Shown: piece by piece, positions 127 to 33,109 of the stretch
How positions within the stretch are numbered: the first letter of the stretch is position 1
How the letters are laid out: each line of letters starts with the position of its first letter
Assembly (NCBI GenBank): GCA_002269645.1
Contig: NIVC01003964.1
Location: 1 to 33,109, forward strand
Origin: Macrostomum lignano
Taxonomy: Eukaryota
Direction of reading: 5' to 3'
Length of the DNA: 33,109 nt
The notes under the pieces: generated by a model
Seen by the model: the letters and a program-made list of their open reading frames with translations, nothing else
Database searches by the model: none
What the model was told of the DNA's origin: nothing
Made by a program: the position numbers and the translations under genes

Positions 127-946
127 GTCAGCTGCAGTGTTGAACAATGCGAGCATATTTATTCACCTATGTAACAGGCATCACGAACTTATCAGCCAGT
201 CGCCAAAACCTCTTTTGCCAAAGTCACATTCACCGAAACCTCTTGTTACCCTATCGCCTATAGCCGAGTCACGCTATTAAAAGCATATAAAATGTAGTTT
301 TCTCAGCAAGCAGCCTGTATTTGTTGTTAGAAAGGAAATAAAGATACTTTAAATTAGTTGACGATTTTGCAGGGGCCTACGGCATAGCCGCTTAACTTCG
401 ATAGAGTTGCTAGTTTCTGACTTCTTCCTTTGATAAGATATGATTGCGAAATTGTTTTTGACTAGGTTAGATAGTCCTAATGTCGTTGCTTTAACTTTAG
501 CCTTAACTTAGAATCAGATATTGCAGTAGCTTTGCTATGACTGGTAGTAATAATAAAACAAACATCAAATTGATATCAATTGCTAAATAAAAGTGTTTTT
601 TTCTTCATCAAGAGAATAGATCTAAATAAATTACGAGCATATGTTAAATTCTATACCAGCAACCAGTTGACAAACTAAAAATGTACTTGCGACAACAACG
701 CACGAATTTCAAAGAACACAAACAAGAATAATAAATTAAAAACTAAAAAAAGAAACAGTTCTAGCAAAGAAAAATACATACCAACGCTTTATTTCTTTTA
801 CGAACTAATTAGTTTAAATGTGTAGCGCTACAGGGACTAGTACATATGCTTTAAGGACACCATACTAGGCCTGTTAACTTGGCTTGTATATCGACTCTAT
901 AAGAAATAAGATTTTAATATTGCCTAAATCTGGCGCTCAATCGCAG

Positions 947-3900
947 ATTGCCCAGCGTCGATGGTATGCTGTACCCTTCGATGATCCCGCTATCGACATT
1001 GCGACATTCGGTAACAGCACTCGTCAAGTCTCAGGAGCGTTTACACTTCAGCAAAGAACGTCTGTCATTGTCGACATCTCGTCGAGAGGCTGTCGTCCCG
1101 CAACTCGGGTTCTAAGAGTAAGAAAAAGCAGCATTTCTGCCAACTGACACAATCATTGACTATAATATCACACTAACCTAAATTTTAGGTTTGCATAGCT
1201 GGAAACGTTGCTCAAGCATTTGTTCTGGTGCGATTCAACACAGACGTGATTCCCTACCTGATCCCTGACTCGGCTACGCTCACTGCAAAGGAAGGAGAAA
1301 TTCTGTGCATTGATGTAAACAGAGATGTCATCAGTGTTCAGGTAGAACCGCAGCTATTAAAGACGACAGCAAGTTCCTACTACTTCTTCTTATCGATCTA
1401 TGGCTGCTTCAGCAACTTAAACGCGTCCTGTCTTACAACGACTACGACGACATCAACAACGTCAACTACAACTACTCCCACAACCTCAACACACATCAAC
1501 CACAACAACACCAACGACATCGACTACAACAACACCGACGACATCGACCCCAACAACCACTACACCGACGACAACACCAACTTCAAGCACAACAAGCACA
1601 AAACATCAACAACAACAAAAGAACCAACAACAACCCCTACAACTCCTACAACAACCAGTACAGCTACAACCACGCCTTCAACTACTTCAACGACAACCAG
1701 CACAACGACAAGCACTACTCCGACGACACCGACAACAACTTCTACTACTACAACTACACCTACGACCTGTAAGAATTAGTAGTAATAGAAATCTAACCCT
1801 TTCGTTTCATTTTATTGTTTTTTGTTATAATCATCATTTGTCTGTAAAAATATGATTTTTAGACTGTCCTGTGGTCGACGGAATGACAAGCGCGCAGTTT
1901 ATACCAGATCAAGACATTTCTGGGGCATCTATTAATCGAGCAGGAGCATTCGTTGTTCAACCACTTGGTTCTATTGTGGTGGATATCTCTGCTCGCGGAT
2001 GTCGTGCGCCAATTCGAATTTTTAGCGTCTGTCTCGGTGGAAATGTGCAAACGACTCTGATTTCAGTACAGAACAATCTGGATTCTAGGCTTGTGCTTTT
2101 CCCTGCATCCGTTACGGGTGGAAACGGGCTGCTTTGTCTTCAAGTGAACAGAGACATCACCGGTTTGCAGCTGATGCCACAGACAATGACTCCTGGAACA
2201 GGATCAGATTTCACATTTTATATGAATATCTACGGCTGCTTCACTGCCTTAAATGCCAGCTGTCTCACTACTACGACTACAACAACCACCACCACAACAA
2301 CGACACCCACGACGACGTCAACGACAACGACACCCACGACGACGTCAACCACAACTACACCAACAACATCGACATCGACTACTCCTACTACCACTACAAC
2401 TCCAACGACGACGTCTACCACAGTCGCACCAACAACCTCCACTTCAACATCTACATCTACCACTTCAACCACTCCAACTTCGAGTACTACAAGCACAACT
2501 ACAACGCCTACTACAACTAGTAGCACTACCACAACACCGACGACTACTTCAACAACCACTACAACACCTACAACTACCAGCACAACTACAACTCCTACGA
2601 CAACGTCAACGACAACAACGTCTACAACTACTGTCAAGCCTACAATTTGTCCAGCACTCAATGGCCTTAGTGATAGAAAGTACATACCTGATTGGGCCAT
2701 TACCGGCGCCACTTATGTAACTGGTCGATACGAGATGCCAGTGAGTCCGAGACGAGATCTTATCATAGATTTGACTGCTGGAGGATGTAATCCTGTTCCT
2801 ACATACCTAACGAGAGTTTGTGTGACAGGAAATGTAAGGCAGGTAACGGTGTCTACCCAGACGACTTATCCGACCGGTCGGTTCGATCTTGTCTTGGAAT
2901 CCAATTTGGTATCTGTCTCGTCTTCGTTGACTCCTCTTTGCATAACTCTCGCGGGCAAACATATCTAGCATTGCAATCACGCCAGTCGCACTACTGAACA
3001 GCTCGTCGCTGGAAACGAATTATTTATTCTTCCTGAGCCTTGAGGGCTGTTTCGCGCCTCTAACTACAGCCTGTCAAACTCAACCTGTAACGACGTCGAC
3101 AACGACGACTTCTACAACGTCGACTACTTCATCCACAACAACAACTCCCACAACTACTAGCACAACGCCGACATCGACCACAACAGCAACTAGCACTACT
3201 ACAACCACTCCGTCGACAACAACATCCTGTTTGGTGAACGGACTCAACGGCGTCTTGATTCCTAGTTCTTCTATCAATGCTCCTAGTTATAATCCGTTAA
3301 CAGGATATAATGTACCCAGAGGCTCAGTGGAAGGCGTCTATGTGGACATTTCTGTATCCGGTTGCCGCACACCGATCCTAATTAATAGGGTATGTAACTT
3401 GTTCTTTTCTTGATATTTAAATAAAATAGCAATTTCAAATGCTAAAATCAGATGCGTTCCGTTTTAGATTTGTCTGTTCGGCGGTAATGTAAAACGAGCT
3501 GATCTTATCATCCGTCAAGGCTCCACCCTCTACTGGGACTTCTTCGAGCAGTCGCTGTACAATACAAGTGACACTGCTACACCGCTGTGCTACTACCCAA
3601 TGCTTCCCATTTCCGAGCTGAGAATTGTTCCGAAAGAGTTTAAAAGCGCAGCCTCAGGCGATTCGTTGTATCAGTTTTTCCTTTCCATCGAGGCCTGTTT
3701 CACTCCTCTGCCAGTATCGTGTACTACGACGACTACCTCAACGACAACTTCAACACCAACCACTTCGACGAGCACAACAACGACTGCGACTACACCGACG
3801 ACAACATCAACAGCGACAACTACACCCACCACGTCGACATCAACGACGAGCACGACGACGAGCACAACGACCACTGCTACTACAACTACGCCTTCATGTG

Positions 3901-6900
3901 CAGTTGATGGCTTGTCGGATGAGCGCTTTATTCCATCATTTGCAGTCAGTGGAGCCAATTACACTGCTTCAGGGTACATGATTCGAACTGGTGGTACCTA
4001 CACAATGACAGTGGACATCTCCGTGTTTGGCTGCCGCATGCCAATTACTGTTGAGAGCGTGAGTATTGAGCAGGAATTTCGTTACAACGTGACACTTTGC
4101 TAATACATTTCAGACATACCACTAGACAATACCCATTGTGTACCACACAACGGTTTTTGCAGATTTGTCTACTAGGAAACATTCAGAGTTCCTACATCCT
4201 GTATCAAACTACATACGGAGGACCATTCAGTCCGAATCTTCCGTCTGCAAGCCAGTCAGCTACTGGGGTTTCCGATCCGTTGTGCTTCACTCCGCCTACA
4301 GGAATGATGCTCACTGGTGTGCGCATCTCACCGCAACAGTTGAAGAGCGCTTTCAGCTCCGACACGGCATTTCGAGCTTACATCACAATCAAGGCTTGCT
4401 TCACACCTTTGAATAATACCTGCTTGACAACTCCGACAACAACGACCACTACTACAACAACTACAACACCCACAACAACCACAACAACTACACCGACAAC
4501 GTCGACCACTACCACTACAACTACTCTGACAAGTACAAGTACTACAACAGTGCCCACAACAAGTAAATAAGATCGTTACATGATTCTTTTAAGTGCTCAA
4601 TTGTCATTGAGAGCTGTATTCGAGAAGTAGTGTATTAATAACTTAATAAATAAGACATTTTCACGTTGTCATTACAGTTTGTCCCGTCGTTAATGGTTTA
4701 TCGAGTCCTGTGTACTTGCCGCAATTTACGATCACTGGTGCGACGTTTGACGGCGCTACTGGCTGGAACATTCCAGTTTCCAGCGGTGGATACATAGCGA
4801 TTGACCTCACAGCTCGTGGATGCCGGGGAGCCTTGACTGTTTATCAGGTACGTATATTACAGAGAAACGAAAGATGTGCCAAGCAAGGAGTACTATTGCT
4901 GACTGTTAAAAAGAGTAATGTTGTGTCTCGGCCTAATGGCCGCTGGACGGGTCATGGTTCGGGCCCTCCCGCCTGAGACACCCCGGTCCCAGCCCTCCCC
5001 TGGCTACTCCGACGACCGCCTCGCTCGGTTCGGCGAGAGTTCGCCGGACCGACCACCCTGGGATCAGCGAGTGTTCACCGGTCCCAGGTCCCTACAGATC
5101 CGGCCCCACGCGGCAACCCGAAAGAAGAAAGCACGCGCTCACCTCTTCTTGATGTATCGACTTATTAACAAGGCGTTAGAATTGGCGGAACGTTTATTGG
5201 CAAAAAGCAGTTATTGGCACGAAGCAGTTATTGGTACGCAAAGGGCAGAGGTACGCCGAAGAACGGAAAAATCAGAAAGAACGAAAAGCGTGGAGCGCAG
5301 CCCGCTCAGGGCTAGCCTTTACATAATATTTACACAGAAAAGGGGAGGGGTGGGCAGAATGGAGAGGGCGAGCCAAACCCTGGGGCCCAGCCGGCTTATC
5401 AGCCAGCCAGCCAATACGAGCAGCCCTAGGGTGAGGCGGGCAAAGAGGGAGGGGGTAGGGTCAGCAACCAGATTGGACAGAAGTTGGGCCGGGGGCTGGG
5501 TGCAGAAAGGGCTAGGCCAGGGTTGAGGCTTACGCCTCTCACAAACCCTGGCCCGGGCGCGAGACGGGGGACGGGGCGGGGCGGCATGAAAAAATGAAAA
5601 CAAGACAAAGTACACAAGCACTGGAAGGGCGCAGCCCAACAGTAATGAGAAAACGTCCTAAGACGTTTTGAACACCCTCGTAGTACTATTAAGCAATTAG
5701 TATAAAGTACTATTTAGTACTTTAACTCTTATAGTTTTTGTTCGACAGTTAGTGTTGAGAGCAAACCTAAACAGTTTATCACGTAAAACTATTTGAATAT
5801 TTTTTGTTTCTGAGTTTTGTTACGAATGATGTAGTAGTTTTACCAGCTAAGCAGTGTGCTTACTATAGACTACGAGAATTTTGTCTTCAGATACTCCGTT
5901 TAAAACGCTTGGAACATTTCAGGTTTGCTTGATAGGAGGAAATGTAAAAAGATCAAACGTGGTTTATCGAAGAACATATTCCGACTATCCGGTTATCTTC
6001 GCCGACTCAATAAACTATGAAACTAGTAGTTCTCAACTGTGCTACAATTTGAACATCGACATGGTCGAGCTCCAAGTCAAGCCTACTGCTCTTCAAGCTC
6101 CTGCAGTGAACTATCAGTTTTTCTTGACTATACAAGCTTGCTTCTTGCCGCTTAACGACACATGCCAAACAACACCAACAACCACAACCACAACGACTAC
6201 AGCCACTACTACTACCACAAGTACCACAACTCCCACTACAAGCACAACAACAAGCACAACAAAACCGACCACAACTTCAACAACTACAACGCCAACAACA
6301 ACTCCTACAACAACTCCAACAACCACAACGCCAACAACCACAACGCCAACTACTCTACCAACGTCATCTACAACTACAACAACGCCAACATCGACAAGCA
6401 CCTCTTCGACTTCCACTACAACAACTACACCTACCACTACTAGAACTACAACTACGCCCACCACGACTGTGACGACGACTCCAACAACTACAATAACAAC
6501 CCCGACTACTACTACTTGTAAGTTAAAACAACGTTTAAAAAGAAACATTTTAGTTTTTGTTCTCGAGTTTCTTTGGAAACCCAGCTTACAAAATGCGATT
6601 AATCATTTTTTAAAACTGACTACTTGATTTTCAGCATGCCTCGTTGATGCCTTCAGTCGTTCGGACTTGCTGCCATCATTCGCAGTCACTGGTGGCACAT
6701 ACAGAGAGCTTTTTGGATACATTCTTCCCCTCAAAGCCGCATTGAAAATCGATCTTACTGTCTTTGGCTGCCGACCCGCTGCTGTGATTTCAAGGGTAAA
6801 GTTTAGATGTTGTATTCCTGTTTTCGACATGGATATGCTTACTCGCTTAGTAACTACGCTCGTATATAACATTAATCTAACTAATCGTCAACGATCGTGA

Positions 6901-9900
6901 TTGCAGCTGTGCATCGCTGGAAACGTGTTCAATGCACAAATCTTGATCCGAGAGCCAACCAGCGACAAACTGGTACCCGACTTCAACACGCCAGGAAAGA
7001 CTTCTTCAACTGGAGATCCTCTGTGCTATGATCTTAATAGACTCACCTCTGAACTAGTGATTGTTCCTCAAGCTACAAAGCCTGGCTACAACTCAACCGA
7101 GTACCAGTTCTTCGTGTCTCTCATGGCCTGCATCAATCCTCTTAACTCCACGTGTCTGACCACGCCGACCACAACGACCAGCACCAGCACTACCAGCACG
7201 ACTACAACTACTACAACGCCGACCACGCCGACTACTGTTACAACAAGCACTACTACAACTACACCGACTACATCTACCACTACGACGACTCCAACGACCA
7301 GCACTACGACATCGACGACAACAAGAACTACTCTGACCACAACACTGGAAACCACAACGTCTTGCGCTATTGACGGCTTCTACCAGTCCAACTTGATTCC
7401 TTCATTCGCTGTAACTGGTGGAGAATACGACCCATTCTATGGCTACAGACTTCCTCTGAAGAACGGAAGCCTTGAGATTGATCTGACTGTAAACTCATGT
7501 CGGCCGCCAATAGTCGTTGATAGGGTACGCGTTTGTATGTCATTTATGACGTGTCTTGAACTATATTTTCCTCACATGTTTCCATACACTGGAATGTCCG
7601 CTTATTCTTTCAGATTTGTCTGATTGGTAACGTGCGAGAAGCCAACTTGCTGTTTGCAAGATTAAGCACTGAAAAGTACTCACCTGATTTGTCTGCTTCG
7701 AGCATCTCAGTTGACACTACGAGTCCGTGGTGCTACACAGTTCTCAACAAAGAGACTGTAGCTAAAATAGCAATTGTGCCTCTGCGACTCAAATCGTTCT
7801 CGACCGACAGTATGTTCAATTTCTTTGTTAGAGTCGATGCCTGCTTCACGCCTCTAACAAGCGCCTGCCTCACGACTCCAACGACTACCACCACAACTAC
7901 TACTCCAACGACAACTTCAACCACGACTTCAACAACAACGAGTACGACTACAACACCCACAACGACGACTCCAACAACCAGCACATCGACTACATCTCCA
8001 ACAACTTCGACCTCTACTACAACTTCAAGCACATTGACACCATCAACAAGTTCTACAACTACAACTACACCAACAACGACGAAAACTACTACACTGCCAA
8101 CATCTTCCACAACTACAACACCAATTGCTTCCACAACGGAGACAACAAAGTCAACTGCAACAACAACACCAACTACTTCAACAGCTTCCACCACATCGAC
8201 AACAATAAGTTCAACTACGACAGCAACTACTACACCAAAGCCAACATGTAAGTACTTTGGCTTAATTTCTTTTAAAACTTTTTGTTATCGTATACTGAAC
8301 TTGAATATTTCTCTTAGTTTGTCCTGCTGTCGATGCGATCGCTGATACATCGTTGCTGCCTTCCTGGGCCATCAGTGGAGCAACATTCTCTCCTGTATTG
8401 GGCTACACAATGTCTAGAGCACCCGGCGAAGGACTTTTCATCGATTTGACATCCAACAACTGCCGCAGACCAGAATACATCACACAGGTACAATTAGTCT
8501 CTGTAGCATTGATTTAATTGGTCATTAGAGTCGCGTCACGATTCAATCTGTAACCGAAAAATCCTTGCACTTTTTAGGTTTGCCTTATCGGCGGTAATGT
8601 AAAGAGAGCTGACCTCATCTACCAGACATCGGCATCTCAGTCATACCTGCCACTGGTTCAGTCCACAACTATTATTCAAGACGGTCCAGGACTTCTGTGC
8701 TACGACCTGAACTTCAACGTGAGCTCTATCATCATCGCACCGAAGGAACTGAAGTCTTCTGCAGCCACCGGATCTAGCACTTACAACTTCTTCCTGTCGG
8801 TGTATGGCTGCTTCATGCCGATTCCGGGATGCACTCCAACGACCAGCACGAGGACAAGCACTAGCGCAACCACGTCAAGCACGACGACCAGCAGTTCATC
8901 TACTGCCAAAACCCCCACGACCGTTACGACTGTGGGAACCACGTGTAAGTCAAATGCACTATCCTTTATGTAAAGACAAAATTGTTTGTTTATTCTGAAC
9001 GCTAACGGCTAAAAGCAAATTGTTTATTCAGTCTGTCCAATGGTAAACGCTCTGTCGAACTCATCGCTCCTGCCAATGGACTATATCACGGGGGCCACCA
9101 GCTTCAGTGATGCTACTGGCTTCAATATTCGCACCGGTACGGATGGATATTTGACTGTGGATCTTACCATTAATAACTGTCGTAGTGGAATTTATATTGA
9201 CAGGGTAAGCTTTTTTAGCTTTATTTCTCTAAGCAGTGCAGAGAACGCATCGGTCTTAAATGCTCTACCCTGCCATAATTCTAGTTGTGTCTCTCTGGAA
9301 ACGTTAGAGAGGCTACGATTCGATACAAGCAGTTCTATGCGGCACCTTTCCAAAATCTTGCTAGCTTGGTATCCTCAGACACTGCGGCGGATCTGTGCTT
9401 CGACATCGGCTTTCCAGTAGCTCAGTTCATAATTTTGCCGCGCACACTCAAGACGGCTTCAGCAACGAGCACGAATTTCCAAATGTACCTCATCATTAAC
9501 GGCTGCTTCACGACAGTTCCAGCAGTGTGTTTGACAACGACTACATCAATAACCACTACTACCACAACCACTCCGACTACTACCACAACCACTCCGACTA
9601 CTACCACAACCACTCCGACTACTACCACAACCACTCCGACTACTACCACAACCACTCCGACTACTACCACAACCACTCCGACTACTACCACAACCACTCC
9701 GACTACTACCACAACCACTCCGACTACTACCACAACCACTCCGACTACTACCACAACCACTCCGACTACTACTACAACCACTCCGACTACTACCACAACC
9801 ACTCCGACTACTACCACAACCACTCCGACTACTACCACAACCACTCCGACTACTACAACAACCACTCCGACTACAACCACAACCACTCCGACTACAACCA

Positions 9901-11251
9901 CAACCACTCCGACTACTACCACAACCACTCCGACTACTACAACAACCACTCCGACTACTACCACAACCACTCCGACTACTACCACTACTACTCCAACTAC
10001 AAGCACCACAACAACAACGACTACTTCCACCACTACTACAACTCCGACTACAACTACGACTGTTGCGCCCACAACGACGTCTTGCATCTGTCCGTCCAAC
10101 TACCAGCCTGTGTTTAAGAACGTCAAGACCGTGCCGTTCTCGTTCCGCTTTTCAAATTTGCAGTGGTTCGATGACTATGCAGACCCGAACAGTTGGCGCT
10201 ACAAGCAGCTGGCTAACTACGCCTTTGAGACCATTATGAAATCATCCAGGTCAACTTCGCTTTATGGTGAACTGCAAAACGCAGTAAACTTACAGTTTAA
10301 GTCGGGAAGTGTTGTCATCAGTGGAAACCTTGTGGTTCGAGACACGTCTACAAACACAGCAGCTTCTATTATCGAGCTTCTCACAAAAGGTTTGAAAGCA
10401 ACAGATCTGGGTGGTGTCATCATCGATAACATTGGATCTTCGGGTGAGCAAAGCAGCTTAAATTGCAAGCGCTTTTTGTGCCTTTGACATGTATATACCA
10501 TATGAAATAATTTCGAATGGTTCCCTAAATTCACAGCCGTCACAAGCCTCACCAGTACCAGCTCAACGACAACGGCCGTCGAATCCACCACTCGGGCAGC
10601 GGCCACGACTGCGGCAGCCAGTGCCGGCACAGCCACAAGCGGTGGCCCTGAGGCCGTGTCGCAGGATTACACCATCCTGATCATTCTGGTTGCAGTAATT
10701 GGCGGACTTTTCCTGCTTGTCCTCGTCATCTTTATCATCGTAAGCGACTTGAATGCTGCTGTATGCAATACTGCACAAGCGCTTGTGCCCATTAGCTGTG
10801 TTTCTTTGCTTATACCGACTAGTACTAAAAATGAGTTGTCTGTCTCTATCTATCTATCTATCTAGCTATGCGATAGATTTCAGAAAAATTGGCTCAACCG
10901 ATTTTCTTCAGACTTGCACCATTTGATCAGAAATTTTCCTGGCACGGTACATGCATCTTGGCTAAGAAATGGCTCAATGTTAAATATACCGACTAAGTAG
11001 CAGTCGGGGACAACTTAAAATCCTTGTTTTAGTTACATGAAGTTGTTCTTGTTACATGAAGAAGCTCGCGGAAGCTATTACCTAAGCAACTGGGTGATAT
11101 GGGAAGTCCGCTAAAACCGCACAAACCCTCCTAAAACCTGCAGGTCTACGCTGTGCAGACCAGGCGCCTGAGGGACGAACTGAACTTGAAGACGAACTAC
11201 CGGATTGAGGAGCCGTACGGACCAGGTTGGGGACTCAGCGTGGGGATTTAG
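947..11251 (+). CDS. Gene 1: 3' part of a giant membrane-tethered mucin-like glycoprotein (10 six-Cys modules with PTS linkers, VNTR, SEA, TM, cytoplasmic tail); the 5' end lies upstream of the window
   Basis: Hand-derived GT-AG exons with compatible phases: 947-1117, 1189-1768, 1863-3389, 3468-4058, 4163-4562, 4678-4847, 5923-6517, 6635-6795, 6907-7524, 7614-8247, 8318-8487, 8578-8944, 9032-9204, 9285-10443, 10537-10739, 11144-11251. Each module reads CxxxNG..IP..IDL..CR|VC..GNV..LCY..P..LK..GCF.PL..C and is followed by a Thr-rich linker. A few small indels interrupt the frame (~952, ~987, ~1495-1600, ~2954). Confidence 0.9.
4919..5641 (-). mobile_element. Solo LTR (723 bp), probably Ty3/Gypsy-type, in a gene 1 intron
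   Basis: Termini are TGTTG (4919) and CAACA (5641). The 4-bp target-site duplication GTAA lies at 4915-4918 and 5642-5645. It is a GC-rich island in an AT-rich intron. A minus-strand AATAAA at 5193-5198 lies downstream of an AT-rich TATA-like patch (~5320-5332), so the orientation is tentative. Confidence 0.85.
9555..9995 (+). repeat. Coding 21-bp VNTR, (TTTTTTP) x 20-21
   Basis: The unit is ACTACTACCACAACCACTCCG. CCG codons recur every 21 nt from 9573 to 9972 (20 units), followed by one CCA unit. Variation between units is synonymous only. Confidence 0.95.
10125..10443 (+). other. SEA domain of gene 1 with a G/SVVI autoproteolysis motif
   Basis: [28 protein letters not shown]...[15 protein letters not shown] matches SEA hallmarks (F.F..N..Y/F...L/A.DP.S..Y..L and F..G^SVVV as in MUC1). 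FKSGSVVI lies at 10296-10319, in the membrane-proximal position typical of SEA domains. Confidence 0.85.
10537..10739 (+). CDS. Gene 1 exon: S/T/A-rich stalk and transmembrane helix
   Basis: The acceptor is TTCACAG|10537. Translation: [68 protein letters not shown]. The donor is GTAAGC at 10740. Confidence 0.85.
10811..11008 (+). mobile_element. Short Helitron/HINE-like element of the same family in the last intron of gene 1
   Basis: TACTAAAAATGAGTTGTCTGTC..TATGCGATAGATTTCAGAAAAATT matches 21881-21936, and GGCTCAACCGATTTTC..ACGGTACATG matches ~21553-21615. It has an internal (TCTA)n run, the 11-bp direct repeat TATACCGACTA (10811, 10985) and the hairpin CCGACT..AGTCGG (10989-11007). Confidence 0.6.
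11144..11251 (+). CDS. Terminal coding exon of gene 1: end of the TM helix and cytoplasmic tail
   Basis: The acceptor CTAAAACCTGCAG|11144 is phase 0, matching the donor at 10740. It reads [35 protein letters not shown], with basic stop-transfer residues right after the TM helix. It is not in the ORF track. Confidence 0.7.
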   Translation, partial: VYAVQTRRLRDELNLKTNYRIEEPYGPGWGLSVGI

Positions 11252-13398: not shown

Positions 13399-13531
<133 letters not shown>

Positions 13532-20179: not shown

Positions 20180-20531
<352 letters not shown>

Positions 20532-22139: not shown

Positions 22140-23146
22140 CGATGAGAAGTTGAGAAATTTGTAGAAATTTCTAAGAAATTTACCATTGCAGAAAACTTTC
22201 GTTTTTGTAAAAAAAACCGGCAAACCATCCACCCTGCAAGCCATATAAAGTTCGTAATGTCTGAGAAAAAACCCGTGGGCGTAGAAGCTTTTGAAAGATT
22301 CGAAGAAACGCACGCCGATGACCCACAGTCAGTGCGCTTTATAAAAAACACTTTGGATTTTAGCAACTTGAGACGCAGGAAAAGTTTAACAAGCGAAGAG
22401 CGGCGGATAAGTTCTCTATTCATTCGCATCTTTAATGGCACAACAGGAGCGCGGGGTGTTGCGCACCAGCCGGCATGGCGCCAGTCGGGCAACGCCCAAC
22501 TTTGCGAGGGCCATTCCTGTCCCCGCACTTAATAAACTCGACGAAATGCTTTTTAAGCTTGCGAACTCGCCGCCCTCACAAGCAGGTCGGCATGGAGTTC
22601 TACCATGGATTTCTGGAAATAGAATCTGGAATTTGGATATCATTCCAGATGTGAATAGTGAAAATAATAAACTCTACCTACTAAACATTTGACGCAGATG
22701 TTCCTTCAATTCATCAGACAGCCTACTAACAAGTAGCAAGCGAAAAATATTGGAACATAACATTAACGACTTCAAGAGTAGTCCCGTGTACCGCCCCGAC
22801 ACATTAGAACGTTGAGCTGAATTTGTACAAGCCAATGCTTGCGCAATATACGAAGTTTATATTGGGATCAGTCAGTCAGGTGCAGTAAAGCGTCAATTAG
22901 TGCTGACACACCTCGAATTTTGGACTTCACTCGTCTGGTTGAAAGTCCCCTAATGCTTGATGGCATCGTTTGAAAACCTTTTAATAGCAATACAGAAGTC
23001 GAGTTGAAAAGCTAAGAGTACAGTACATGTACCGTAAGTACATGTCTTTTAAGGTATTAAAAGAAAAATTGAGCGTAAAGATATTGATTTATGAAATGCA
23101 GTCATTCCACAAGAACTAGTTTCAGTACCACTAAATCATGCACCCT

Positions 23147-23401
23147 ATGACTTTATAACTCCATTATCAGCAGGAATATTTGCCGCGGCAGCCCTTCTAG
23201 CTGTCCTGACATTGCCGGTTGCCGGCTTCACAACGACAGCGGATCCCTTCTGCTCGTGCGTGCCGCTCACCACCAAGTACTTCTTCACCACCCCAACTCC
23301 AACCACTCCCACCACCACGGTCACTACAACGACGCCCACGACAACTTCAACTACGACGCCAACTACAACTACAACAACACGGCTGCCGACAACCACACCA
23401 G
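23147..23401 (+). CDS. Putative first coding exon of gene 2: signal peptide, CSC motif and Thr/Pro linker
   Basis: The frame from 23161 reads PLSAGIFAAAALLAVLTLPVAG-FTTTADPFCSCVPLTTKYFFTTPTPTT..., a hydrophobic h-region with a small-residue VAG cleavage site. It ends at a G|GTGAGT phase-1 donor matching the next exon. The ATG at 23147 is off-frame by one base (a 3-T run where 4 T are needed). Confidence 0.75.
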
Positions 23402-26400
23402 GTGAGTGCGGCACCGCTGATCATTCATGATCATTATTGTTGTATATTCTTGCAACTAAATAAATTTTTATTACGAGTAATTTAGCGATTCGACAAAAAG
23501 CCCTGAAAAGTTTGCGTCAACGGTGTAGGAGGTACCTGTAGGAGCCGTGACGGGTGTCAACTGAAGCATTCGAATGGAGCCCTATAAGTAAAGGTCTGGA
23601 CAAAAAAATCCATTACTTGATAGACTTTTTATCCCCTGGTAGCCCATGAGAGACCTGCATAGGATGTCTCGACGTCTCTAATCTCCCGTTCTCGAGTTAT
23701 CGATCTCCTAAATCTCAAATTTTAAGGTTTAGATGCAGAAGGTTTTCATACTAATAGGCTAAAAATTCTAATTTAAAAAAAATCTTCAGTCTGCGACTAC
23801 GTGAACGGTCTGTCGCAGAAGTCTTACATCCCGGACAAATCCATCTCTGGTGGACGGCCGGGAGTCACCGGCAGCTTTCTTATTAATTTCAACGATCAGA
23901 TGGAGTTTGACTTCATTGTCGATGGCTGTCGAACTACTGAAATTTTTGTGAACACTCTGTGCATGACTGGAAACGTGATGCGAGCAGTAGTGCAGTACAT
24001 GCCGACCACCAGTAGCCGCTACGTCCCATTTGAGCCGTCCAGCTCCCTGTTTTCTGATGTAACTGGCGCCAGGCTGTGCTATGAGCTGAATACGAGGATG
24101 GCTCGGCTTGCCTTTTATCCAGTCGCACTGAAGTCCGGAGCCCTCTCGGCCACCAACTACCAGGTATTCCTCACCATCGACGGCTGCTTCACACCGGTTA
24201 ATGACAGCTGCCAAACTACCTCCACAAGCACTACAACTTCTACTACCACTACCAGCACTACTACGACCCCGACGACTACATCTACTACTACTACAACGAC
24301 GCCGACAACACCCACTACAACTCCGACGACATCCACCACAACCACCAGCACAACACCGACAACCACCACAACAACGACGCCTACCACTACGACTTGTAAG
24401 TTCAGTGTTAGTAAATCAGTTATCAAAAGTTAATGATTTATAACTGATACAGATATTAATTTTAAGACATAACTTTCATTAGAACTCTTTTAGTCCCGGC
24501 CCCTTAAGAAAATAGCGCATCTCAATGCCTCTTTTCAACTACAGATTGCCCCAGTGTCGATGGTATGCTGTACCCTTCGATGATCCCCGCTATCGACATT
24601 TCGACATTCGGTAACAGCACTCGTCAAGTCTCAGGAGCGTTTACACTTCAGCCTAGAACGTCTGTCATTGTCGATATCTCGTCGAGAGGCTGTCGTCCCG
24701 CAACTCGGGTTCTAAGAGTAAGAAAAAGCAGCACTTCTACCAACTGACACAATGATTGACTATAATATCACACTAACCTAAATTTTAGGTTTGCATAGCT
24801 GGAAACGTTGCTCAAGCATTTGTTCTGGTGCGATTCAACACAGACGTGATTCCCTACCTGATCCCTGACTCGGCTACGCTCACTGCAAAGGATGGAGAAA
24901 TTATGTGCATTGATGTAAACAGAGATGTCATCAGTGTTCAGGTAGAACCGCAGCTATTCAAGACGACAGCAAGTTCCTACTACTTCTTCTTATCGATCTA
25001 TGGCTGCTTCAGCAACTTAAACGTGTCCTGTCTGACAACACCGACAGCCACTACTAGCAGCACTACCAGCACATCAAGCACAACCAGCAGCACCAGCACT
25101 ACTTCGACCACGACAACATCCACTTCTACGACGACGACACCGACAACGCCAACAACAACTCGGACAACCTCAACCACAACCAGCACAACACCGACAACCA
25201 CCACTGTAACGACACCTACCACTACGACTTGTAAGAATTGCTGCACTAATATTTTCAATATCAGTAAAAAACTAATCCTCACTTATTGCATGACTAAGCT
25301 GCATACAATATGCTCGAAAGAGAGCAGAAACGTCTAAAAATGAAAACTTTTAACAAATTTCGCTATATGAAAGTTTATCTTATTTTAGCTTTTCATTGAC
25401 TTTTATGTTTTTTGGCACATAACCATTTTAGACTGCCGCATTGTGAACGGCATGTCGGACTACTCCTATATTCCGCTCACCGCCGTGAATCACGCGACGA
25501 ATGATCCGCTTCGCGGCTGGCTGGTTCACCAAAATGACGTCATGCAAATTGACCTGGTACTTGGATCTTGTCGTGCCCCGATTCGAATCGAAACAGTGAG
25601 TTTGATATTTTACAAGCGATTCAACAAATTCGAATTCTCACGACTTTGGTTTAAAAATGATATTTATTTAAGAAATTTCTTCACCTAACAATAACTCGTT
25701 TCAGATCTGTATCAGTGGCACTGTAAAACGGGCCAACATTTTGTACGGGGAAACATTCGATAAACCGTTCGTTCCCGTGCCGAGATCAGCATCCGTATCG
25801 AGCGATGTTGGAGATCTGTGCTACGACATTAAACTAGTTGCGGCCAAGATTGGAATTTTTCCATTGGAGTTCAAGTCGTCGGCACCGAACAAAACCCAGT
25901 ACCAGTTCTACCTCACGATCAACGCGTGCTTCTTGCCGCTTTCCGCAGTGTGTCTGACAACGCCAACAACAACTACAAGCACTACCACTACCCCAACAAC
26001 ACCAACGTCTACTAAAACCACATCCACCACATCAACGACTCCAACTACAACCAGCACGACAGCATCTACACAAACTACTTCAATATCGACATCAACTCCA
26101 ACAACAGTTTCTACGACGACACCTGCGACAACTACAACTGGCACAACTTCTTCATCCACAACGCAAACGACTGCCACACCGACCACGAGCACCACTGGAA
26201 CAACCACTACGACAACTTCTACGACTCCTAAGCCAACAAGTAGGTTTTATACTGCTGAGCATTTTTCATTCGAAGCCATGTGATTTTTATGGGTTTCAAT
26301 TGTTTTAATTCGGGGCTCCGAACTACAGCAGTTCTATGAGGGTAGTTAAATCTCTTCACTACCCTCATTTAGTCTCTGCTCTTAGTCTATCCAGCTGCAC

Positions 26401-29400
26401 TAAATACTTTTAAGCCCTTTTTAGCACCCAACTTCTATGTAATCCCTTCTGAACCAAAAGGATTGTTCCTCAAAAATAACCAAAAGGTTAAAGAGGGATT
26501 ACCAAAAGGTTATCCCTCTCTGCAAAACAGATAAATTTACAAAATAATCTTTACGCTGAAGATAACTACTGAGATAAGCATATAATGTGTTAATGTTAAA
26601 AATGATATATATGTATATTGGACCAGATGTACGTATAGATAAAGTATCTCATGGCGTGGACAGCTGAAGTAGAAGGATGTTACACAAGAAAATCATGTAA
26701 ATTTCATAGGAAACCAGTTTTTTTCTGCAAAAATGCATTAGCAACATAAGAAGCTGTCACTAATTTTAGGACTAAATTCATAATATCTCATATTATGGAT
26801 TTCCGAATTCGGAATTAAGCGAGCAGGGAGTGGTTTCGTTCAAGGAGAAAAATCCGTCTAGAACAATACATTAGAAATACAAACAGGTGAAATTTTCTCC
26901 GTAACTTTGCTTGCCGACGAGTCCCCCCCTAGTAAGTATTTCATAAAACAATAGCTTGTTAATTTATGAGTGAGTGAACCCCAGGAAATGTCGACTTGTT
27001 TACTTGTCAGAAAGGGAGCTATTCGGATTTTTTAGAACTAAAAAGCGAACACCTCCTTATATCGCCAATGAATTTTGCAATGAAAATCGGCCCCCATTTC
27101 AACTTGTACGATTTGCAAAGAAACGCGTCATTTTACTTCGGTTGGCCATGTTCTACAATGAATGGTTCATTGCAGATCTGTGGTATTAAAGCGCTCTAAA
27201 ACAGTTTCTAAATTTAAAACAGATATAACTTCTGCTAAGTAGAAGTTCTGTTTTACACAGCAGAGTTAACAAATCAGTTTGAAGGATTTATGTTGCTACA
27301 GATAAAAACAGGGTCAACAATTTTCAATAGGACTTGAAATTCAGACTGGTAAACCTCTTCGGGAAAACCTCGCTGCGGGAAAATCTCGGCGGGGAAAACT
27401 CGGCAGGAAAGACTCGGTGGGAAAACCTCCCGTGGAAAAATTTTCCTGCCGGAAGGAAGAGAGGAGAGAGGAGAAAGAAGGTTAGAGAGCAGAGCGCTGG
27501 GTAGAGATGTATACATTGAGTGGGCCGGATTGCTAATTGTGAAGTTTCAAAGGACCCGAGGGCCGGATAGAGAGACTTTGCGGGCCGCATGTGACCCACG
27601 AGCTGGCGTTTTCCGACCCCTGATTTACAAAAATTCGATGTGACTCTATGTGACTGCAAGCAAAATCAAACCCATTGCATGGACATGCGAGGGAGCAAAA
27701 TTGGAATGTATCACCTCTAAGCTACACCTCGCAGGGAATTCTGCATCCTTTGTGTATCGTTTATAAAAGTTAACTTGCCTTGTTAACTTGCTTGTCAACA
27801 AGTTAATTGGAAATAAGGACCACAATACGAGAAGTAGAAGTCCTCTCAGACAATAAATTTGGCAGCATTACATTTAAGCGAGAAGGGAGAATGGGGCATT
27901 ACTACACAGCACCTCAGAGGCCGTCAGGGCCACTATGAGCGGCGCGGCAAAATTCTAATACCAAGTCAGGCATCCCGCCACAGATGATCACAAATGGAGT
28001 TGAGAATGTGATGGAGAAAGCTTTACTGACCCAGAGAGTGAATTTCACGAATTCAACCAAGCCAATAAAAAAGTGAGCCGAAAAGGATACTCCAGTCAGG
28101 TACTCACAGCCAGCTAGCAGCATTACGAAAAACATCAATTCTTACAGAATGAAAAATCAATGACTAAAATTATTTACTATAACTACGAGCTACTCTGATT
28201 TTTAAGTATTTCTCAATAACTTTCAAAACGGTACATTTAGACTCATAAAAGTCCAATGCTTACTTTTTTGCCTCATTTTCAAGTAATTAGGAGTAATTAA
28301 AAACAAAGGTCTAAACGAAATATTGGAAACGTATGTACCGATTTTATTGCAGTCTGCCCACTGATCAATGGACTGACCAGCAGTACCTACATCCCGTCCT
28401 ACTCTATCAGCGGAGTCTCGTCTGACCCCACATTTGGATACAGCATTTTAAGGTCCACCTCTGGTTTTATGGATATCGATCTGTCTGCCGTGAACTGCCG
28501 ACCAAATCCAGTCTACATTGAAAGGGTAGAGCTTTTTGAATAAAACTATTGTTAATAAACAATTATTAAGCAATTTCTTTAGAATTCCATTTTTCCATTA
28601 AAAAATTCAGATCTGTCTGTACGGAAACATCAAACAAGCTAACATTCACTTAAAAAGAAGCGTCACTGGAAATCTGGTCTTTTCTGAGCTATCTTTCACA
28701 ACCACCGGCGACGCCATGGCCGACTCGCTTTGCTACTCGATCGGATTCAACATATCGGCAGTGAGAATTGCTCCTCAGTTGGTAAAGTCGTATGATTCGG
28801 CTGCGACAAACTTCCGGTTTTCCGTCACCATTGAGGGTTGCTTCGAACCACTGCCGAGCACTTGCACTGCGCCAACGACTACGACGTCAACTACTACATC
28901 AACTACTGCACCTAGAACTACCACAAGTGCTACGACATCGACTTCAACAACGACCACCACACCGACCAGTTCGACGACTATAACTACTCCAACAACAACA
29001 TTAACAACAACGACTACATCAACAACTCCAACAACAACGTCGACGACCACGACAACGACGCCGACCACAACGACACCAACAAGTACGACTACAACATCCC
29101 GAGTACAACCTGTGAGTTCATTTCTAGACAATTAAATTGTAAATCCATTTACAAAACTGTTGACTGTCTTTTCTATCGATTCTGTATGGGCATTGGAATT
29201 TTATATTGCATAAATCTGGCGCTCAATTGCAGATTGCCCCAGTGTCGATGGTATGCTGTACCCTTCGATGATCCCCGCTATCGACATTGCGACATTCGGT
29301 AACAGCACTCGTCAAGTCTCAGGAGCGTTTACACTTCAGCCTAGAACGTCTGTCATTGTCGATATCTCGTCGAGAGGCTGTCGTCCCGCAACTCGGGTTC

Positions 29401-32975: not shown

Positions 32976-33109
32976 GTATGTATAATAGGGTACAACGTAA
33001 GATGACGCAGCTTTTATTTTTAATCTTCTCTGGCTTAACAGTGAGAGTCTATTAAACCAGAATTTTGTTATATTTTATTTTGCTTTTGCGCTGTAGTGCC
33101 TTTGTATGT

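What the first reader, a model, noticed from the sequence alone, without database searches (positions are those of the whole stretch)
947..9530. Beads-on-a-string mucin built from an unassigned ~140-aa six-cysteine module
Seen: after splicing, the window holds 19.5 copies of one module (10 in gene 1, 9.5 in gene 2; 14 distinct positions if joined), each followed by a ~35-130 aa Thr/Ser/Pro linker. The consensus is C-x3-(N/D)G..(I/L)P...(I/V)xG..(I/V)D(L/I)xxxxCR..(V/I/L)CxxGNV..LC(Y/F/I/L)..P..LK..(Y/F)xFxLxIx(G/A)CFxPLxxxC. All six Cys are kept in every complete copy while most other positions vary strongly. Established: F5/8 type C (discoidin) domains begin CxxPLGM..IPDxQI.ASS, contain an IDL strand and end ELYGC, with a disulfide joining the termini. 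Here [25 protein letters not shown] and IYGC echo these features. Inference: this is a divergent discoidin/lectin-like fold with two extra disulfides, deployed as a diversified array of binding or cross-linking heads on a glycosylated rod. It could be a surface adhesion, glycocalyx or microbe-recognition system. I do not recognise this architecture from a described family.
Basis: partly seen in the sequence, partly recalled or inferred. Interest (0 to 1): 0.82.

Follow-up and report, generated by a model that had tools for sequence, protein, structure and literature searches.

The report
Flatworm membrane mucin with discoidin-fold beads
This Macrostomum lignano (flatworm) contig carries two copies of a gene for a cell-surface mucin whose sugar-coated rod is interrupted 14 times by a 140-residue, six-cysteine module; the module matches no catalogued family by sequence but is predicted to fold like the discoidin (factor V/VIII C) binding domain, so it is a new variant of known parts and not a new kind of system.

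Summary
On the + strand there are 10 modules (947-9530) and 9.5 modules (23792-33109). Each is about 135-142 aa with six conserved Cys, and they are separated by linkers that are 89% Thr/Ser/Pro. The window is a whole 33,109-bp contig of the flatworm Macrostomum lignano.

Gene 1 ends with a (PTTTTTT)n array, a Pfam-significant SEA domain carrying a GSVVI motif, a transmembrane helix and a short tail. It is therefore a membrane-tethered, SEA-type mucin. Gene 2 supplies the probable signal-peptide start. Its last 5.5 modules are a 97%-identical duplicate of gene 1's first 5.5.

The module has no Pfam or PDB sequence hit. AlphaFold models (pLDDT 94) have F5/8-type-C discoidin domains as their best structural neighbours. 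Only about 20 relatives turned up among 1.84 billion representative proteins. They include a chiton "mucin-2-like" protein and an unidentified invertebrate contig with the same bead/linker layout. These distant relatives keep only the canonical terminal Cys pair, so the flatworm modules added two disulfides.

Family membership by sequence is not met, and ligand binding is untested. Frameshifting 1-2-bp indels in both copies look like assembly errors (dN/dS 0.23).

Verdict: new variant of a known kind, moderate interest.

The parts
947..1431 (+). Gene 1 module 1 (array position 5). A exon about 947-1117, phase-0 intron 1118-1188, B exon 1189-1431. The A exon has 1-bp deletions at 951 and 986 relative to the gene 2 copy, so Cys1 is lost as assembled.
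1432..1772 (+). Thr/Ser/Pro linker 1. It contains an out-of-frame stretch reading H/N/D/Y, and 103-nt and 29-nt indels relative to the gene 2 copy.
1865..2263 (+). Gene 1 module 2 (position 6), intronless, followed by a 128-aa PTS linker (2264-2647).
2648..3074 (+). Gene 1 module 3 (position 7), intronless. A 1-bp insertion at 2950 breaks the frame.
3228..3722 (+). Gene 1 module 4 (position 8). A exon 3228-3389, intron 3390-3467, B exon 3468-3722.
3897..4423 (+). Gene 1 module 5 (position 9). A exon 3897-4058, intron 4059-4162, B exon 4163-4423.
4680..6165 (+). Gene 1 module 6 (position 10). A exon 4680-4847, unusually long intron 4848-5922 (1075 nt), B exon 5923-6165.
6637..7155 (+). Gene 1 module 7 (position 11). 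A exon 6637-6795, intron 6796-6906, B exon 6907-7155.
7363..7868 (+). Gene 1 module 8 (position 12). A exon 7363-7524, intron 7525-7613, B exon 7614-7868.
8320..8832 (+). Gene 1 module 9 (position 13). A exon 8320-8487, intron 8488-8577, B exon 8578-8832.
9034..9530 (+). Gene 1 module 10 (position 14). A exon 9034-9204, intron 9205-9284, B exon 9285-9530.
9531..10082 (+). Terminal mucin array, 184 aa and 98% T/S/P. It includes a 21-nt (PTTTTTT) tandem repeat of 21.2 copies at 9555-10000.
10083..10443 (+). SEA domain (Pfam PF01390, E 6e-9, 36.4 bits against a cut-off of 26.4). The candidate autoproteolysis motif G|SVVI is at 10305-10319. The donor G|GTGAGC is near 10443.
10537..10742 (+). Exon with a short Ser/Thr/Ala stalk and the transmembrane helix ([24 protein letters not shown], 10668-10739). 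The donor GTAAGC is at 10743.
11144..11251 (+). Last exon of gene 1: cytoplasmic tail [35 protein letters not shown], then stop. It matches the tail of paralogue P0021.
23027..23033 (+). Inferred first coding exon of gene 2 (ATGTACC, then donor GTAAGT).
   Evidence: inference from sequence; no transcript evidence
23171..23420 (+). Gene 2 exon 2. It holds the rest of the signal peptide (PGIFAAAALLAVLTLPVAG), the conserved PFCSCVPLTTKYFF motif and the first PTS stretch.
   Evidence: the motif is shared with P0001/P0021
23792..24211 (+). Gene 2 module 1 (position 1), intronless.
24547..25031 (+). Gene 2 module 2 (position 2). A exon 24547-24717, B exon 24789-25031. It is about 88% identical in DNA to position 5.
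25434..25953 (+). Gene 2 module 3 (position 3). A exon 25434-25595, B exon 25705-25953.
28355..28865 (+). Gene 2 module 4 (position 4). A exon 28355-28525, B exon 28611-28865.
29235..29719 (+). Gene 2 module 5 (copy of gene 1 module 1, with an intact frame). A exon 29235-29405, B exon 29477-29719.
30023..30421 (+). Gene 2 module 6 (copy of gene 1 module 2). The following linker has 1-bp deletions at 30549 and 30651.
30801..31225 (+). Gene 2 module 7 (copy of gene 1 module 3), with a 1-bp deletion at 31027.
31364..31857 (+). Gene 2 module 8 (copy of gene 1 module 4). The A exon is frameshifted at 31451. B exon 31603-31857.
32032..32560 (+). Gene 2 module 9 (copy of gene 1 module 5). A exon 32032-32193, B exon 32297-32560.
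32810..32975 (+). Gene 2 half-module 10 (copy of the gene 1 module 6 A exon), with a 2-bp deletion at 32936. The contig ends in the following intron.

Best explanation
The window is a complete contig of the flatworm Macrostomum lignano. It carries two tandem, recently duplicated copies of one gene. Gene 1 lacks its 5' end and gene 2 lacks its 3' end. The full product is a type-I membrane-tethered mucin laid out as follows: signal peptide, a short PFCSCVPLTTKYFF motif, 14 units of [about 140-aa six-Cys module plus heavily O-glycosylatable Thr-rich linker], a (PTTTTTT)n array, an SEA domain with a G|SVVI autoproteolysis-type motif, a transmembrane helix, and a tail of about 35 aa.

The module is a strongly diverged descendant of the discoidin / F5-8 type C jelly-roll. 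It keeps the terminal Cys1-Cys5 disulfide and has gained two more disulfides. It belongs to a small, uncatalogued module family that also forms bead/linker mucins in a chiton and in unidentified invertebrates.

Likely mechanism (inferred):
- The protein projects from an apical epithelial surface as a stiff glycosylated rod and contributes to the glycocalyx.
- The SEA domain provides a non-covalent break point that can shed under force, as in vertebrate membrane mucins.
- The 14 disulfide-locked beads each have their own conserved sequence. They act as multivalent lectin-like or cross-linking heads towards glycans, neighbouring mucins or microbes, and at the least as rigid, protease-resistant spacers.

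Shown: architecture, splice structure, fold class, homologues, purifying selection. Inferred: signal-peptide exon, SEA cleavage, disulfide pairing, surface location, any ligand binding.
For: **Organism and contig.** P0005 is PAA49141.1, BOX15_Mlig023086g3, on a 33,109-bp contig.

**Modules and linkers.**

**Gene structure.**
- The intron sits at the same phase-0 position (...R|VC...) with GT-AG in all 13 split modules for which both junctions could be read. For G2M8, whose A exon is frameshifted, only the acceptor was read.
- The same junction is used in deposited gene models P0003 and P0005.

**C-terminal anchor.**
- The SEA domain scores above the Pfam cut-off. GSVVI, the TM helix and the tail exon were located.
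- The SEA-TM-tail part aligns with paralogue P0021. P0021 and P0001 have the same N-terminal signal peptide and motif.
- The 14 positions map collinearly onto P0021 at 46-54% identity, against 23-42% between positions.

**Fold.**
- AlphaFold gives pLDDT 94.5 / pTM 0.88 and 94.0 / 0.89.
- The top Foldseek hits are FA58C domains.
- hhalign of flatworm against distant modules gives 98.2%, E 4e-14.
- Distant modules align collinearly over their full length with canonical FA58C, E 0.0018.
- Distant members keep only Cys1 and Cys5.
- P0025 carries a Pfam-significant canonical F5_F8_type_C domain directly next to a diverged module.

**Selection.** dN/dS is 0.23 between the duplicate copies over 692 codons.

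**Same architecture elsewhere.** It is seen in L001 and in chiton P0007.
Against: - No transcript or protein data were available here.
- Both copies contain frameshifting indels, and neither is complete on the contig.
- Pfam F5_F8_type_C and the PROSITE-type signatures fail on every module.
- hhalign probability to FA58C is low: 14.7% for distant members and 0.9% for the flatworm modules.
- In the hhalign alignment the loop corresponding to FVIII C2 'spike 3' is essentially absent. The canonical membrane- and ligand-binding surface may therefore not be conserved.
- Model coordinates could not be inspected, so disulfide pairing and surface features are unverified.
- The start codon and first exon of gene 2 are inferred from sequence only.
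Confidence: 0.6

Rival explanations
1. The beads are purely structural. They would be disulfide-locked spacers that interrupt and stiffen the PTS rod and resist proteases, like the repeated SEA modules of MUC16 or the CysD domains of gel-forming mucins, with no specific ligand.
For: - The invariant positions are almost entirely Cys, Gly, Pro and core residues.
- Mean column entropy is about the same in strands (1.74) and in non-strand segments (1.91), so no conserved surface patch stands out.
- The loop aligned to discoidin 'spike 3' is missing.
Against: - Each array position is individually conserved between paralogues at 46-54% identity, and dN/dS is 0.23. This is more constraint than a generic spacer needs.
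- The closest structural neighbours are all binding domains: neuropilin b1, FV/FVIII C and CBM32.
Confidence: 0.25
2. The locus is a decaying pseudogene pair or an assembly artefact, for example redundant haplotigs joined head-to-tail, and not two working genes.
For: - There are eight frameshifting indels across the two copies.
- Gene 1 has no 5' end and gene 2 has no 3' end on the contig. The contig's end repeats its start.
- Transposon fragments and satellites fill the 12 kb between the copies.
- The deposited protein from this contig is only a 290-aa fragment.
Against: - The indels are 1-2 bp and mostly in short C or T runs. They hit different sites in the two copies, and there are no in-frame stops within module exons. 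This is the pattern of long-read consensus errors.
- dN/dS is 0.23 with dS 0.035.
- All splice sites are intact.
- Near-identical gene models from another assembly (P0003) and full-length paralogues (P0001, P0021) exist.
Confidence: 0.1
3. The module is not discoidin-derived. It would be an independent member of the broad galactose-binding-domain-like jelly-roll superfamily (CBM32-, APC10- or IFT25-like), or a convergent beta-sandwich, and the N-terminal 'C..DGM..IPD' echo would be coincidence.
For: - No sequence method reaches significance against FA58C.
- The Foldseek lists also contain CBM32, CBM86, APC10 and IFT25 at only slightly worse scores.
Against: - For both models the best-ranked hits are animal FA58C domains.
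- The hhalign alignment to FA58C is end-to-end and in register. It aligns the start motif, the 'W' region, the '...DL' strand and the terminal '..GC'.
- The only two Cys of the distant members are at the positions of the FA58C disulfide.
- A canonical FA58C domain sits next to a diverged module in P0025.
- FA58C domains are reported as characteristic of lophotrochozoan mucin-like proteins (PMC4948705).
Confidence: 0.15

Closest known systems
F5/8 type C (discoidin) domain, Pfam PF00754 (neuropilin b1, FV/FVIII C1-C2, lactadherin C2, CASPR2, DDR1)
   Same: - Predicted all-beta jelly-roll, with these domains as the top structural neighbours.
- Similar size, about 140-150 aa.
- Cys at the very start and in a C-terminal '..GC' motif.
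- An N-terminal 'C..(D/L)GM...I(P).D..I' echo.
   Different: - It fails the Pfam HMM and both signature patterns.
- Profile-profile probability is only 0.9-14.7%.
- It lacks the conserved W...WLQVDL...TQG and R.E..GC motifs.
- The spike-3 loop is absent.
- Flatworm copies add four Cys (two extra disulfides), and 6 of 13 copies carry an N-x-S/T-C sequon before the last Cys.
SEA-type transmembrane mucins (vertebrate MUC1, MUC3/12/13/17, MUC16; 'mucin1-like' SP-PTS-SEA-TM proteins reported in the sea anemone Actinia tenebrosa, PMC9080433)
   Same: - Signal peptide, long PTS region, an SEA domain with a G|SVV motif, a single TM helix and a short cytoplasmic tail.
- MUC16 also alternates globular modules with PTS stretches (own knowledge).
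   Different: - The globular beads are discoidin-fold modules, not SEA.
- There are no EGF domains.
- There is no sequence similarity outside the SEA domain, so orthology to any vertebrate MUC gene is not implied.
CysD domains of gel-forming mucins (MUC2, MUC5AC, MUC5B)
   Same: Cys-rich globular domains that interrupt PTS regions and are thought to give non-covalent cross-links (own knowledge). The 'bead on a glycosylated string' logic is the same.
   Different: - The fold and the Cys count are different.
- Those mucins are secreted VWD-C8-TIL-CK polymers. No VWD, C8, TIL or CK domain is found in the flatworm gene or its paralogues.
Hemolectin-type / lophotrochozoan VWD mucin-like proteins with canonical F5_F8_type_C domains (Lang et al. 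2016, PMC4948705)
   Same: - Discoidin domains within mucin-like proteins are described as characteristic of Lophotrochozoa.
- P0025/P0014 combine TIL/VWC domains, one canonical FA58C domain and many diverged modules.
   Different: - There the discoidin domains are few, canonical, and embedded between VWD units.
- Here a diverged module is the repeating unit of the mucin region itself, and the flatworm protein is SEA-anchored and has no VWD domain.
Insect intestinal mucins / peritrophins (six-Cys CBM14 chitin-binding domains alternating with PTS linkers)
   Same: Small six-Cys carbohydrate-binding modules alternate with mucin linkers (own knowledge). This is a functional analogy for multivalent glycan binding.
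   Different: - The fold is unrelated and the modules are 60-70 aa.
- They are secreted into a chitin matrix and are not membrane anchored.
Liolophura sinensis 'mucin-2-like' XP_064614628.1 (P0007), and the exon array on ENA contig ERZ25069853 ctg28616l (L001)
   Same: Homologous module (hhalign 98.2%, E 4e-14) alternating with Thr/Pro-rich linkers.
   Different: - Only two Cys per module.
- The 'RP..GW.V' and 'V.GNV' motifs are kept more clearly.
- No SEA or TM domain is detected in P0007.
- In L001 most module hits lie within single open reading frames of 153-185 codons, without the internal phase-0 intron, though some hits cover only part of the module.

Membership tests
F5/8 type C (discoidin) domain, PF00754 | Match to the Pfam F5_F8_type_C HMM at or above the gathering score | tested here: not met
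   There was no hit even at E<=10 for 3 window modules, for the full-length paralogues and distant homologues, or for 13 distant modules. As a positive control, 7 of 7 canonical domains hit at E down to 2.5e-35.
F5/8 type C (discoidin) domain, PF00754 | PROSITE-type FA58C_1 and FA58C_2 signature patterns (patterns written from memory) | tested here: not met
   The patterns matched 0 of 13 flatworm modules and 0 of 13 distant modules. On canonical controls they matched 7 of 7 and 6 of 7.
F5/8 type C (discoidin) domain, PF00754 | Distorted jelly-roll beta-barrel fold with discoidin domains as the nearest structural neighbours | tested here: met
   AlphaFold models have pLDDT 94.5 and 94.0. Top Foldseek PDB hits are neuropilin b1, CASPR2 discoidin, FV/FVIII C and lactadherin C2, with E from 3e-6 to 7e-4 and TMq 0.54-0.71.
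F5/8 type C (discoidin) domain, PF00754 | Disulfide joining the N-terminal Cys to the Cys of the C-terminal '..GC' motif | tested here: inconclusive
   Cys1 and Cys5 occupy these positions. They are the only Cys kept in distant members, and the '..AC' motif aligns to '..GC'.
F5/8 type C (discoidin) domain, PF00754 | Statistically supported profile-profile homology | tested here: inconclusive
   hhalign of distant modules against 7 FA58C domains gave 129 aligned columns, collinear, with E 0.0018 but probability 14.7%. Flatworm modules against FA58C gave probability 0.9%. The control alignment had only 7 sequences.
F5/8 type C (discoidin) domain, PF00754 | Ligand binding (lipid, glycan or peptide) through loops at one end of the barrel | not testable with these tools
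   This needs recombinant protein. In the alignment the spike-3 loop is absent.
SEA-type transmembrane mucin | Long Pro/Thr/Ser-rich (PTS) regions suited to dense O-glycosylation | tested here: met
   The ten linkers of gene 1 total 950 aa and are 89% T/S/P and 68% Thr. There is a 21-nt tandem repeat of 21.2 copies. Glycosylation itself was not tested.
SEA-type transmembrane mucin | SEA domain next to the membrane | tested here: met
   PF01390 scores E 6e-9 and 36.4 bits, against a cut-off of 26.4. It lies about 75 residues before the TM helix.
SEA-type transmembrane mucin | G|SVVV-type autoproteolysis motif in the SEA domain | tested here: met
   GSVVI is at 10305-10319 within the SEA match. 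Paralogue P0021 has EGSVKA at the same place. Cleavage itself is not testable here.
SEA-type transmembrane mucin | Single-pass TM helix and cytoplasmic tail | tested here: met
   The hydrophobic stretch [24 protein letters not shown] is at 10668-10739. It is followed by donor GTAAGC, and the tail exon starts at 11144. These align to the P0021 TM helix and tail.
SEA-type transmembrane mucin | N-terminal signal peptide | tested here: inconclusive
   Hydrophobic ...GIFAAAALLAVLTLPVAG precedes the conserved PFCSC motif in gene 2. The Met exon (23027-23033) is inferred from ATG plus GTAAGT only. Paralogues P0001 and P0021 have a clear signal peptide, MPRRCLQTAFVALAACLLCAVQHAAC.
Gel-forming (VWD-C8-TIL-CK) mucins | VWD, C8, TIL and cystine-knot domains flanking the PTS region | tested here: not met
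   Pfam finds none in the window's C-terminal region or in the full-length paralogues P0001 and P0021.

The most novel reading that the evidence does not exclude
The ~140-aa module would define an uncatalogued, spiralian-wide (possibly wider) domain family descended from the discoidin domain. It would be the signature bead of a previously unrecognised class of mucins. In Macrostomum the 14 position-specific, triple-disulfide versions on an SEA-anchored rod would form a multivalent 'lectin ruler', in which each bead has its own conserved ligand specificity for glycans or microbes.
Probability: 0.3. Interest if true: 0.7.

Novelty: new variant of a known kind. Interest (0 to 1): 0.5.

Why it matters
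Mucin biology outside vertebrates is poorly charted, and surveys rely on Pfam domains (VWD, SEA, F5_F8) to find and classify mucins.

This module is a well-folded domain that is invisible to those profiles, yet it is the main non-PTS component of large mucins in a flatworm, a chiton and at least one more invertebrate. Adding a profile for it would let such proteins be found and typed.

M. lignano is a transgenic and RNAi-tractable model with a well-studied surface and adhesion biology. A membrane mucin carrying 14 individually conserved lectin-fold heads is therefore a testable entry point into how soft-bodied marine animals build and use their glycocalyx, for example as a barrier, for microbe handling or for adhesion and release.

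It also gives a clear case of a discoidin domain drifting beyond sequence recognition while gaining extra disulfides.

Tried and rejected
**Sequence searches that gave nothing**
- Pfam on the modules found no hit. Weak chance matches (Hint, HMA, DUFs) were discarded.
- PDB sequence searches with one module and with the distant-member profile gave only chance hits such as MetQ, E>0.3.
- phmmer of the SEA region against PDB found nothing. SEA rests on Pfam alone.
- The word-indexed search of 5.8 billion proteins gave nothing with the flatworm alignment and 3 short unnamed fragments with the distant alignment. Only the exhaustive HMMER scan found relatives.
- In that scan, P0012 and P0015 are repeat-driven, per-domain insignificant matches and were set aside as false positives.

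**Annotation and literature**
- The UniProt auto-names of the M. lignano paralogues (ZP-, PKD-, CUB-, REJ-, DUF3707-domain-containing) are mutually inconsistent. The Pfam scans of P0001, P0004 and P0021 gave no match to support such names, and the other named paralogues were not scanned.
- Rfam found nothing in the window.
- The literature search for the locus tag returned nothing. Papers on M. lignano adhesion and mucins did not mention this family.

**Limits of this work**
- Disulfide connectivity could not be read because model coordinates are not exposed.
- Row 8 of alignment A1 carries two intron-derived residues ('VR'). This was recognised after the splice analysis and does not affect the conclusions.
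- A VWD-type gel-forming mucin reading was rejected because no VWD, C8, TIL or CK domain is present.

Full report
**1. What is in the sequence**

The window is eukaryotic. It has short GT-AG introns, microsatellites and a retroelement fragment.

Three-frame translation of the + strand and pattern scans show a repeated protein module. In most copies it is split into an N-terminal 'A' exon (C-x3-[ND]G...IP...[ILV]D[ILF]....C[RN]........) and a C-terminal 'B' exon ([VIL]C[ILMV]xGN[VI] ... LC[YF] ... P..LK ... [GA]CF.PL...C). Each module is followed by a Thr-rich stretch.

- Gene 1 holds 10 modules between 947 and 9530.
- Gene 2 holds 9 modules and one A-half between 23792 and about 32975.
- An alignment of the 13 distinct modules (A1) has six invariant Cys plus P14, D43, G62 and P111. 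Identity to the first module is only 23-42%.
- The ten gene 1 linkers total 950 aa. They are 89% T/S/P and 68% Thr.
- The last linker contains a 21-nt (PTTTTTT) tandem repeat of 21 copies.

**2. Gene structure**

- All 13 split modules for which both junctions could be read have the intron at the same phase-0 position (...R/Q/S/T | [VIL]C...). Donors are GTA/GTG and acceptors are YAG. For G2M8, whose A exon is frameshifted, only the acceptor was read.
- Intron lengths are 71-111 nt, except for one of 1075 nt in gene 1 module 6.
- Three modules (two in gene 1, with copies in gene 2, and gene 2 module 1) have lost the intron.
- The same junction is used in deposited gene models, for example P0005 '...ITVES|ICLLGNIQ' and P0003.
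- Downstream of the last module, gene 1 continues as follows:
  - An SEA domain: PF01390, E 6e-9, 36.4 bits against a cut-off of 26.4. It contains GSVVI at 10305-10319, which is the G|SVVV-type autoproteolysis motif of membrane mucins. That assignment is from established knowledge, and cleavage was not tested.
  - A short intron.
  - A Ser/Thr/Ala stalk.
  - A 24-residue hydrophobic helix at 10668-10739, followed by donor GTAAGC.
  - A final exon at 11144 encoding [35 protein letters not shown].
- Gene 2 begins with a hydrophobic leader and the motif PFCSCVPLTTKYFF. Its Met exon (ATGTACC|GTAAGT at 23027) is my inference.

**3. Origin and the duplication**

Protein P0005, encoded in the window, is GenBank PAA49141.1 (BOX15_Mlig023086g3) of Macrostomum lignano, on a contig of exactly 33,109 bp. 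The window is therefore a whole contig.

Self-BLAST shows that 1639-4876 matches 29795-33004 at 97.2%, and 871-1595 matches 29157-29909 at 87.5%. Nothing matches upstream of 871. Gene 2 modules 5-9.5 thus duplicate gene 1 modules 1-5.5, and a full gene should have 14 modules.

Comparing the copies base by base gives 137 mismatches and 23 indels. Eight small indels shift the frame:

- in gene 1 at 951, 986 and 2950;
- in gene 2 at 30549, 30651, 31027, 31451 and 32936.

They fall mostly in short C or T runs, and at different sites in the two copies. Over 692 unshifted codons, dS is 0.035, dN is 0.008 and dN/dS is 0.23.

I read the indels as long-read assembly errors and not as gene death. This needs re-sequencing to confirm. 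Whether the two copies are true tandem paralogues or redundant haplotigs cannot be decided here.

**4. What the module is: sequence**

- No Pfam family matches any module, even at E<=10.
- No PDB chain matches by sequence.
- An exhaustive HMMER scan of 1.84 billion representative proteins with A1 found only 20 proteins. They fall into these groups:
  - M. lignano paralogues: P0001-P0006, P0008 and P0009. P0001 and P0021 are near full-length: signal peptide, PFCSC motif, modules, SEA-like region, TM helix and tail.
  - A chiton protein annotated 'mucin-2-like' (Liolophura sinensis XP_064614628.1, P0007), with 7 modules between Thr/Pro-rich linkers.
  - Unnamed proteins from metagenome-labelled contigs.
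- One of those contigs (L001, ENA ERZ25069853) shows alternating PTS exons and module exons on one strand. This is the same architecture in an unidentified invertebrate.
- hhalign of the flatworm modules against 13 distant modules (A2) gives 98.2% probability and E 4e-14, so they form one family.
- The distant members have only two Cys. These correspond to Cys1 and Cys5 of the flatworm module.

**5. What the module is: structure**

- AlphaFold2 on A1 gives pLDDT 94.5 and pTM 0.88, an all-beta model. On A2 (the chiton module) it gives pLDDT 94.0 and pTM 0.89.
- Foldseek against the PDB ranks F5/8-type-C discoidin domains first for both models.
  - Flatworm model: neuropilin-2/-1 b1, CASPR2, FVIII C2 and lactadherin C2, with E from 8e-5 to 7e-4 and TMq 0.54-0.66.
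  - Chiton model: NRP2 b1b2, FV, FVIII and CASPR2, with E from 3e-6 to 1e-4 and TMq 0.65-0.71.
- Bacterial CBM32 and other galactose-binding-domain-like folds follow.
- Against a control alignment of seven canonical discoidin domains (A3; all hit PF00754), the distant modules align end-to-end and in register. 'DGM..IPD..I' aligns to 'LGME.G.I.D.QIT', 'RP..GW' to 'ARL..NAW', '..I.LDL' to 'WLQVDL', and '..V.AC' to 'R.EL.GC'. Support is weak, however: E 0.0018 and probability 14.7%.
- The flatworm modules alone give only the N-terminal motif, at probability 0.9%.
- PROSITE-type FA58C patterns match 0 of 26 modules, against 7 of 7 and 6 of 7 controls.
- One giant relative (P0025, 4511 aa) has a Pfam-significant canonical F5_F8_type_C domain immediately before a diverged module. 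About 25 shorter related modules separated by PTS linkers follow, with TIL/VWC domains further on.

My conclusion is that the fold is discoidin-like and descent from FA58C is likely, but formal family membership by sequence is not met. Cys1-Cys5 corresponds to the canonical terminal disulfide. Cys2, 3, 4 and 6 are flatworm additions, giving two extra disulfides. Their pairing could not be checked because model coordinates are not exposed.

**6. Array organisation**

The 14 positions map collinearly onto paralogue P0021. Positions 3, 4, 5, 9, 11, 13 and 14 each find their own counterpart at 46-54% identity. This is higher than the 23-42% seen between positions within one protein.

The array is therefore old and position-specific, not homogenised by concerted evolution. 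The exception is positions 2 and 5, which are about 88% identical in DNA.

Column entropy is only slightly higher outside strands (1.91) than inside them (1.74). Length variation is concentrated in the 82-95 loop. Six of 13 modules carry an N-x-S/T-C sequon just before the last Cys.

**7. Mechanism**

- **Shown:** a type-I architecture with PTS rod, SEA domain, TM helix and tail; disulfide-rich beads of a binding-domain fold; purifying selection.
- **Inferred:** the protein stands on an apical surface as part of the glycocalyx.
- **Inferred:** SEA self-cleavage gives a force-sensitive, sheddable ectodomain, as in vertebrate membrane mucins.
- **Inferred:** the beads act as multivalent lectin-like or cross-linking heads, or at the least as rigid spacers.
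- **Rivals:** spacer-only beads; pseudogene or assembly artefact; non-discoidin jelly-roll. These are weighed in the dedicated fields.

**8. Comparison with the known, and novelty**

- SP-PTS-SEA-TM 'mucin1-like' proteins have been reported in a sea anemone (PMC9080433).
- Canonical F5_F8 domains are noted as characteristic of lophotrochozoan VWD-type mucin-like proteins (PMC4948705).
- Globular beads interrupting PTS regions are familiar from MUC16 (SEA) and MUC2/5 (CysD) (own knowledge).

Three things are new here. The first is the module family itself, which is absent from Pfam as of 2025. The second is its use as the repeating unit of the mucin region. The third is the flatworm-specific triple-disulfide form on an SEA anchor.

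I found no paper on this locus. I rate it a new variant of a known kind, of moderate interest.

Noticed in passing
window 871-4876 vs 29157-33004: The end of the contig repeats its beginning (97.2% and 87.5% identity), so each gene copy is incomplete on the contig. This could be a true tandem duplication or redundant haplotigs in the polyploid-like M. lignano assembly.
   Followed up: partly
window 951, 986, 2950, 30549, 30651, 31027, 31451, 32936: 1-2-bp indels, mostly in short C or T runs, shift the reading frame at different places in the two copies. The pattern suggests long-read consensus errors.
   Followed up: partly
window 1465-1640: Part of linker 1 reads His/Asn/Asp/Tyr-rich in the open frame, while the Thr-rich reading is in another frame. 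There are 103-nt and 29-nt indels relative to the gene 2 copy. This is either a compensated frameshift inside a mucin repeat or an assembly error.
   Followed up: no
window 4848-5922: The intron of module 6 is 1075 nt, against 71-111 nt for all the others. It contains a GC-richer segment with reversed GC skew and a 202-codon ORF with no Pfam hit and no other copy in the window. It may be an inserted element.
   Followed up: partly
window 23242-23290 (PFCSCVPLTTKYFF): A short Cys-containing motif directly after the signal peptide is conserved with paralogues P0001 and P0021. Its role is unknown.
   Followed up: no
window 13608-14006 (- strand): A fragment of an LTR-retrotransposon pol gene (Pfam RT_RNaseH, E 1e-13) lies between the two mucin genes.
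   Followed up: yes
window 11804-12445, 13399-13531, 20180-20531: Long tetranucleotide microsatellites are present: (TGAG)x161, (CTAT)x33 and (TATC)x88. They create long spurious ORFs.
   Followed up: no
window 16939-17552 and 17753-18609: Two adjacent AT-rich satellite arrays are present, one of 46 nt x 13.4 copies and one of 23 nt x 38 copies, with related units.
   Followed up: no
window 10823-10890 and 21881-21936: A short dispersed repeat (75% identity) sits next to CTAT/TATC microsatellites. One copy is in the intron after the TM exon.
   Followed up: no
L001 (ENA ERZ25069853 ctg28616l), 1-20507, + strand: An unidentified invertebrate contig filed as metagenome carries the same design. 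Module hits, most of them within single ORFs of 153-185 codons with two Cys each, alternate with PTS exons and are separated by (TA)n-rich introns.
   Followed up: partly
P0025 (JGI metagenome protein, 4511 aa): A giant mucin-like protein has VWC-like domains and one canonical F5_F8_type_C domain (171-285) abutting a diverged module (312-453). About 25 shorter 121-aa 'CxKxMK' modules between PTS linkers follow, then TIL/VWC domains and three more modules. The organism is unknown.
   Followed up: partly
modules, last 8 residues (e.g. window 1417-1431, 2249-2263): An N-x-S/T-C sequon immediately before the last Cys occurs in 6 of 13 distinct modules. It is a possible conserved N-glycan next to the added C-terminal disulfide.
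   Followed up: no
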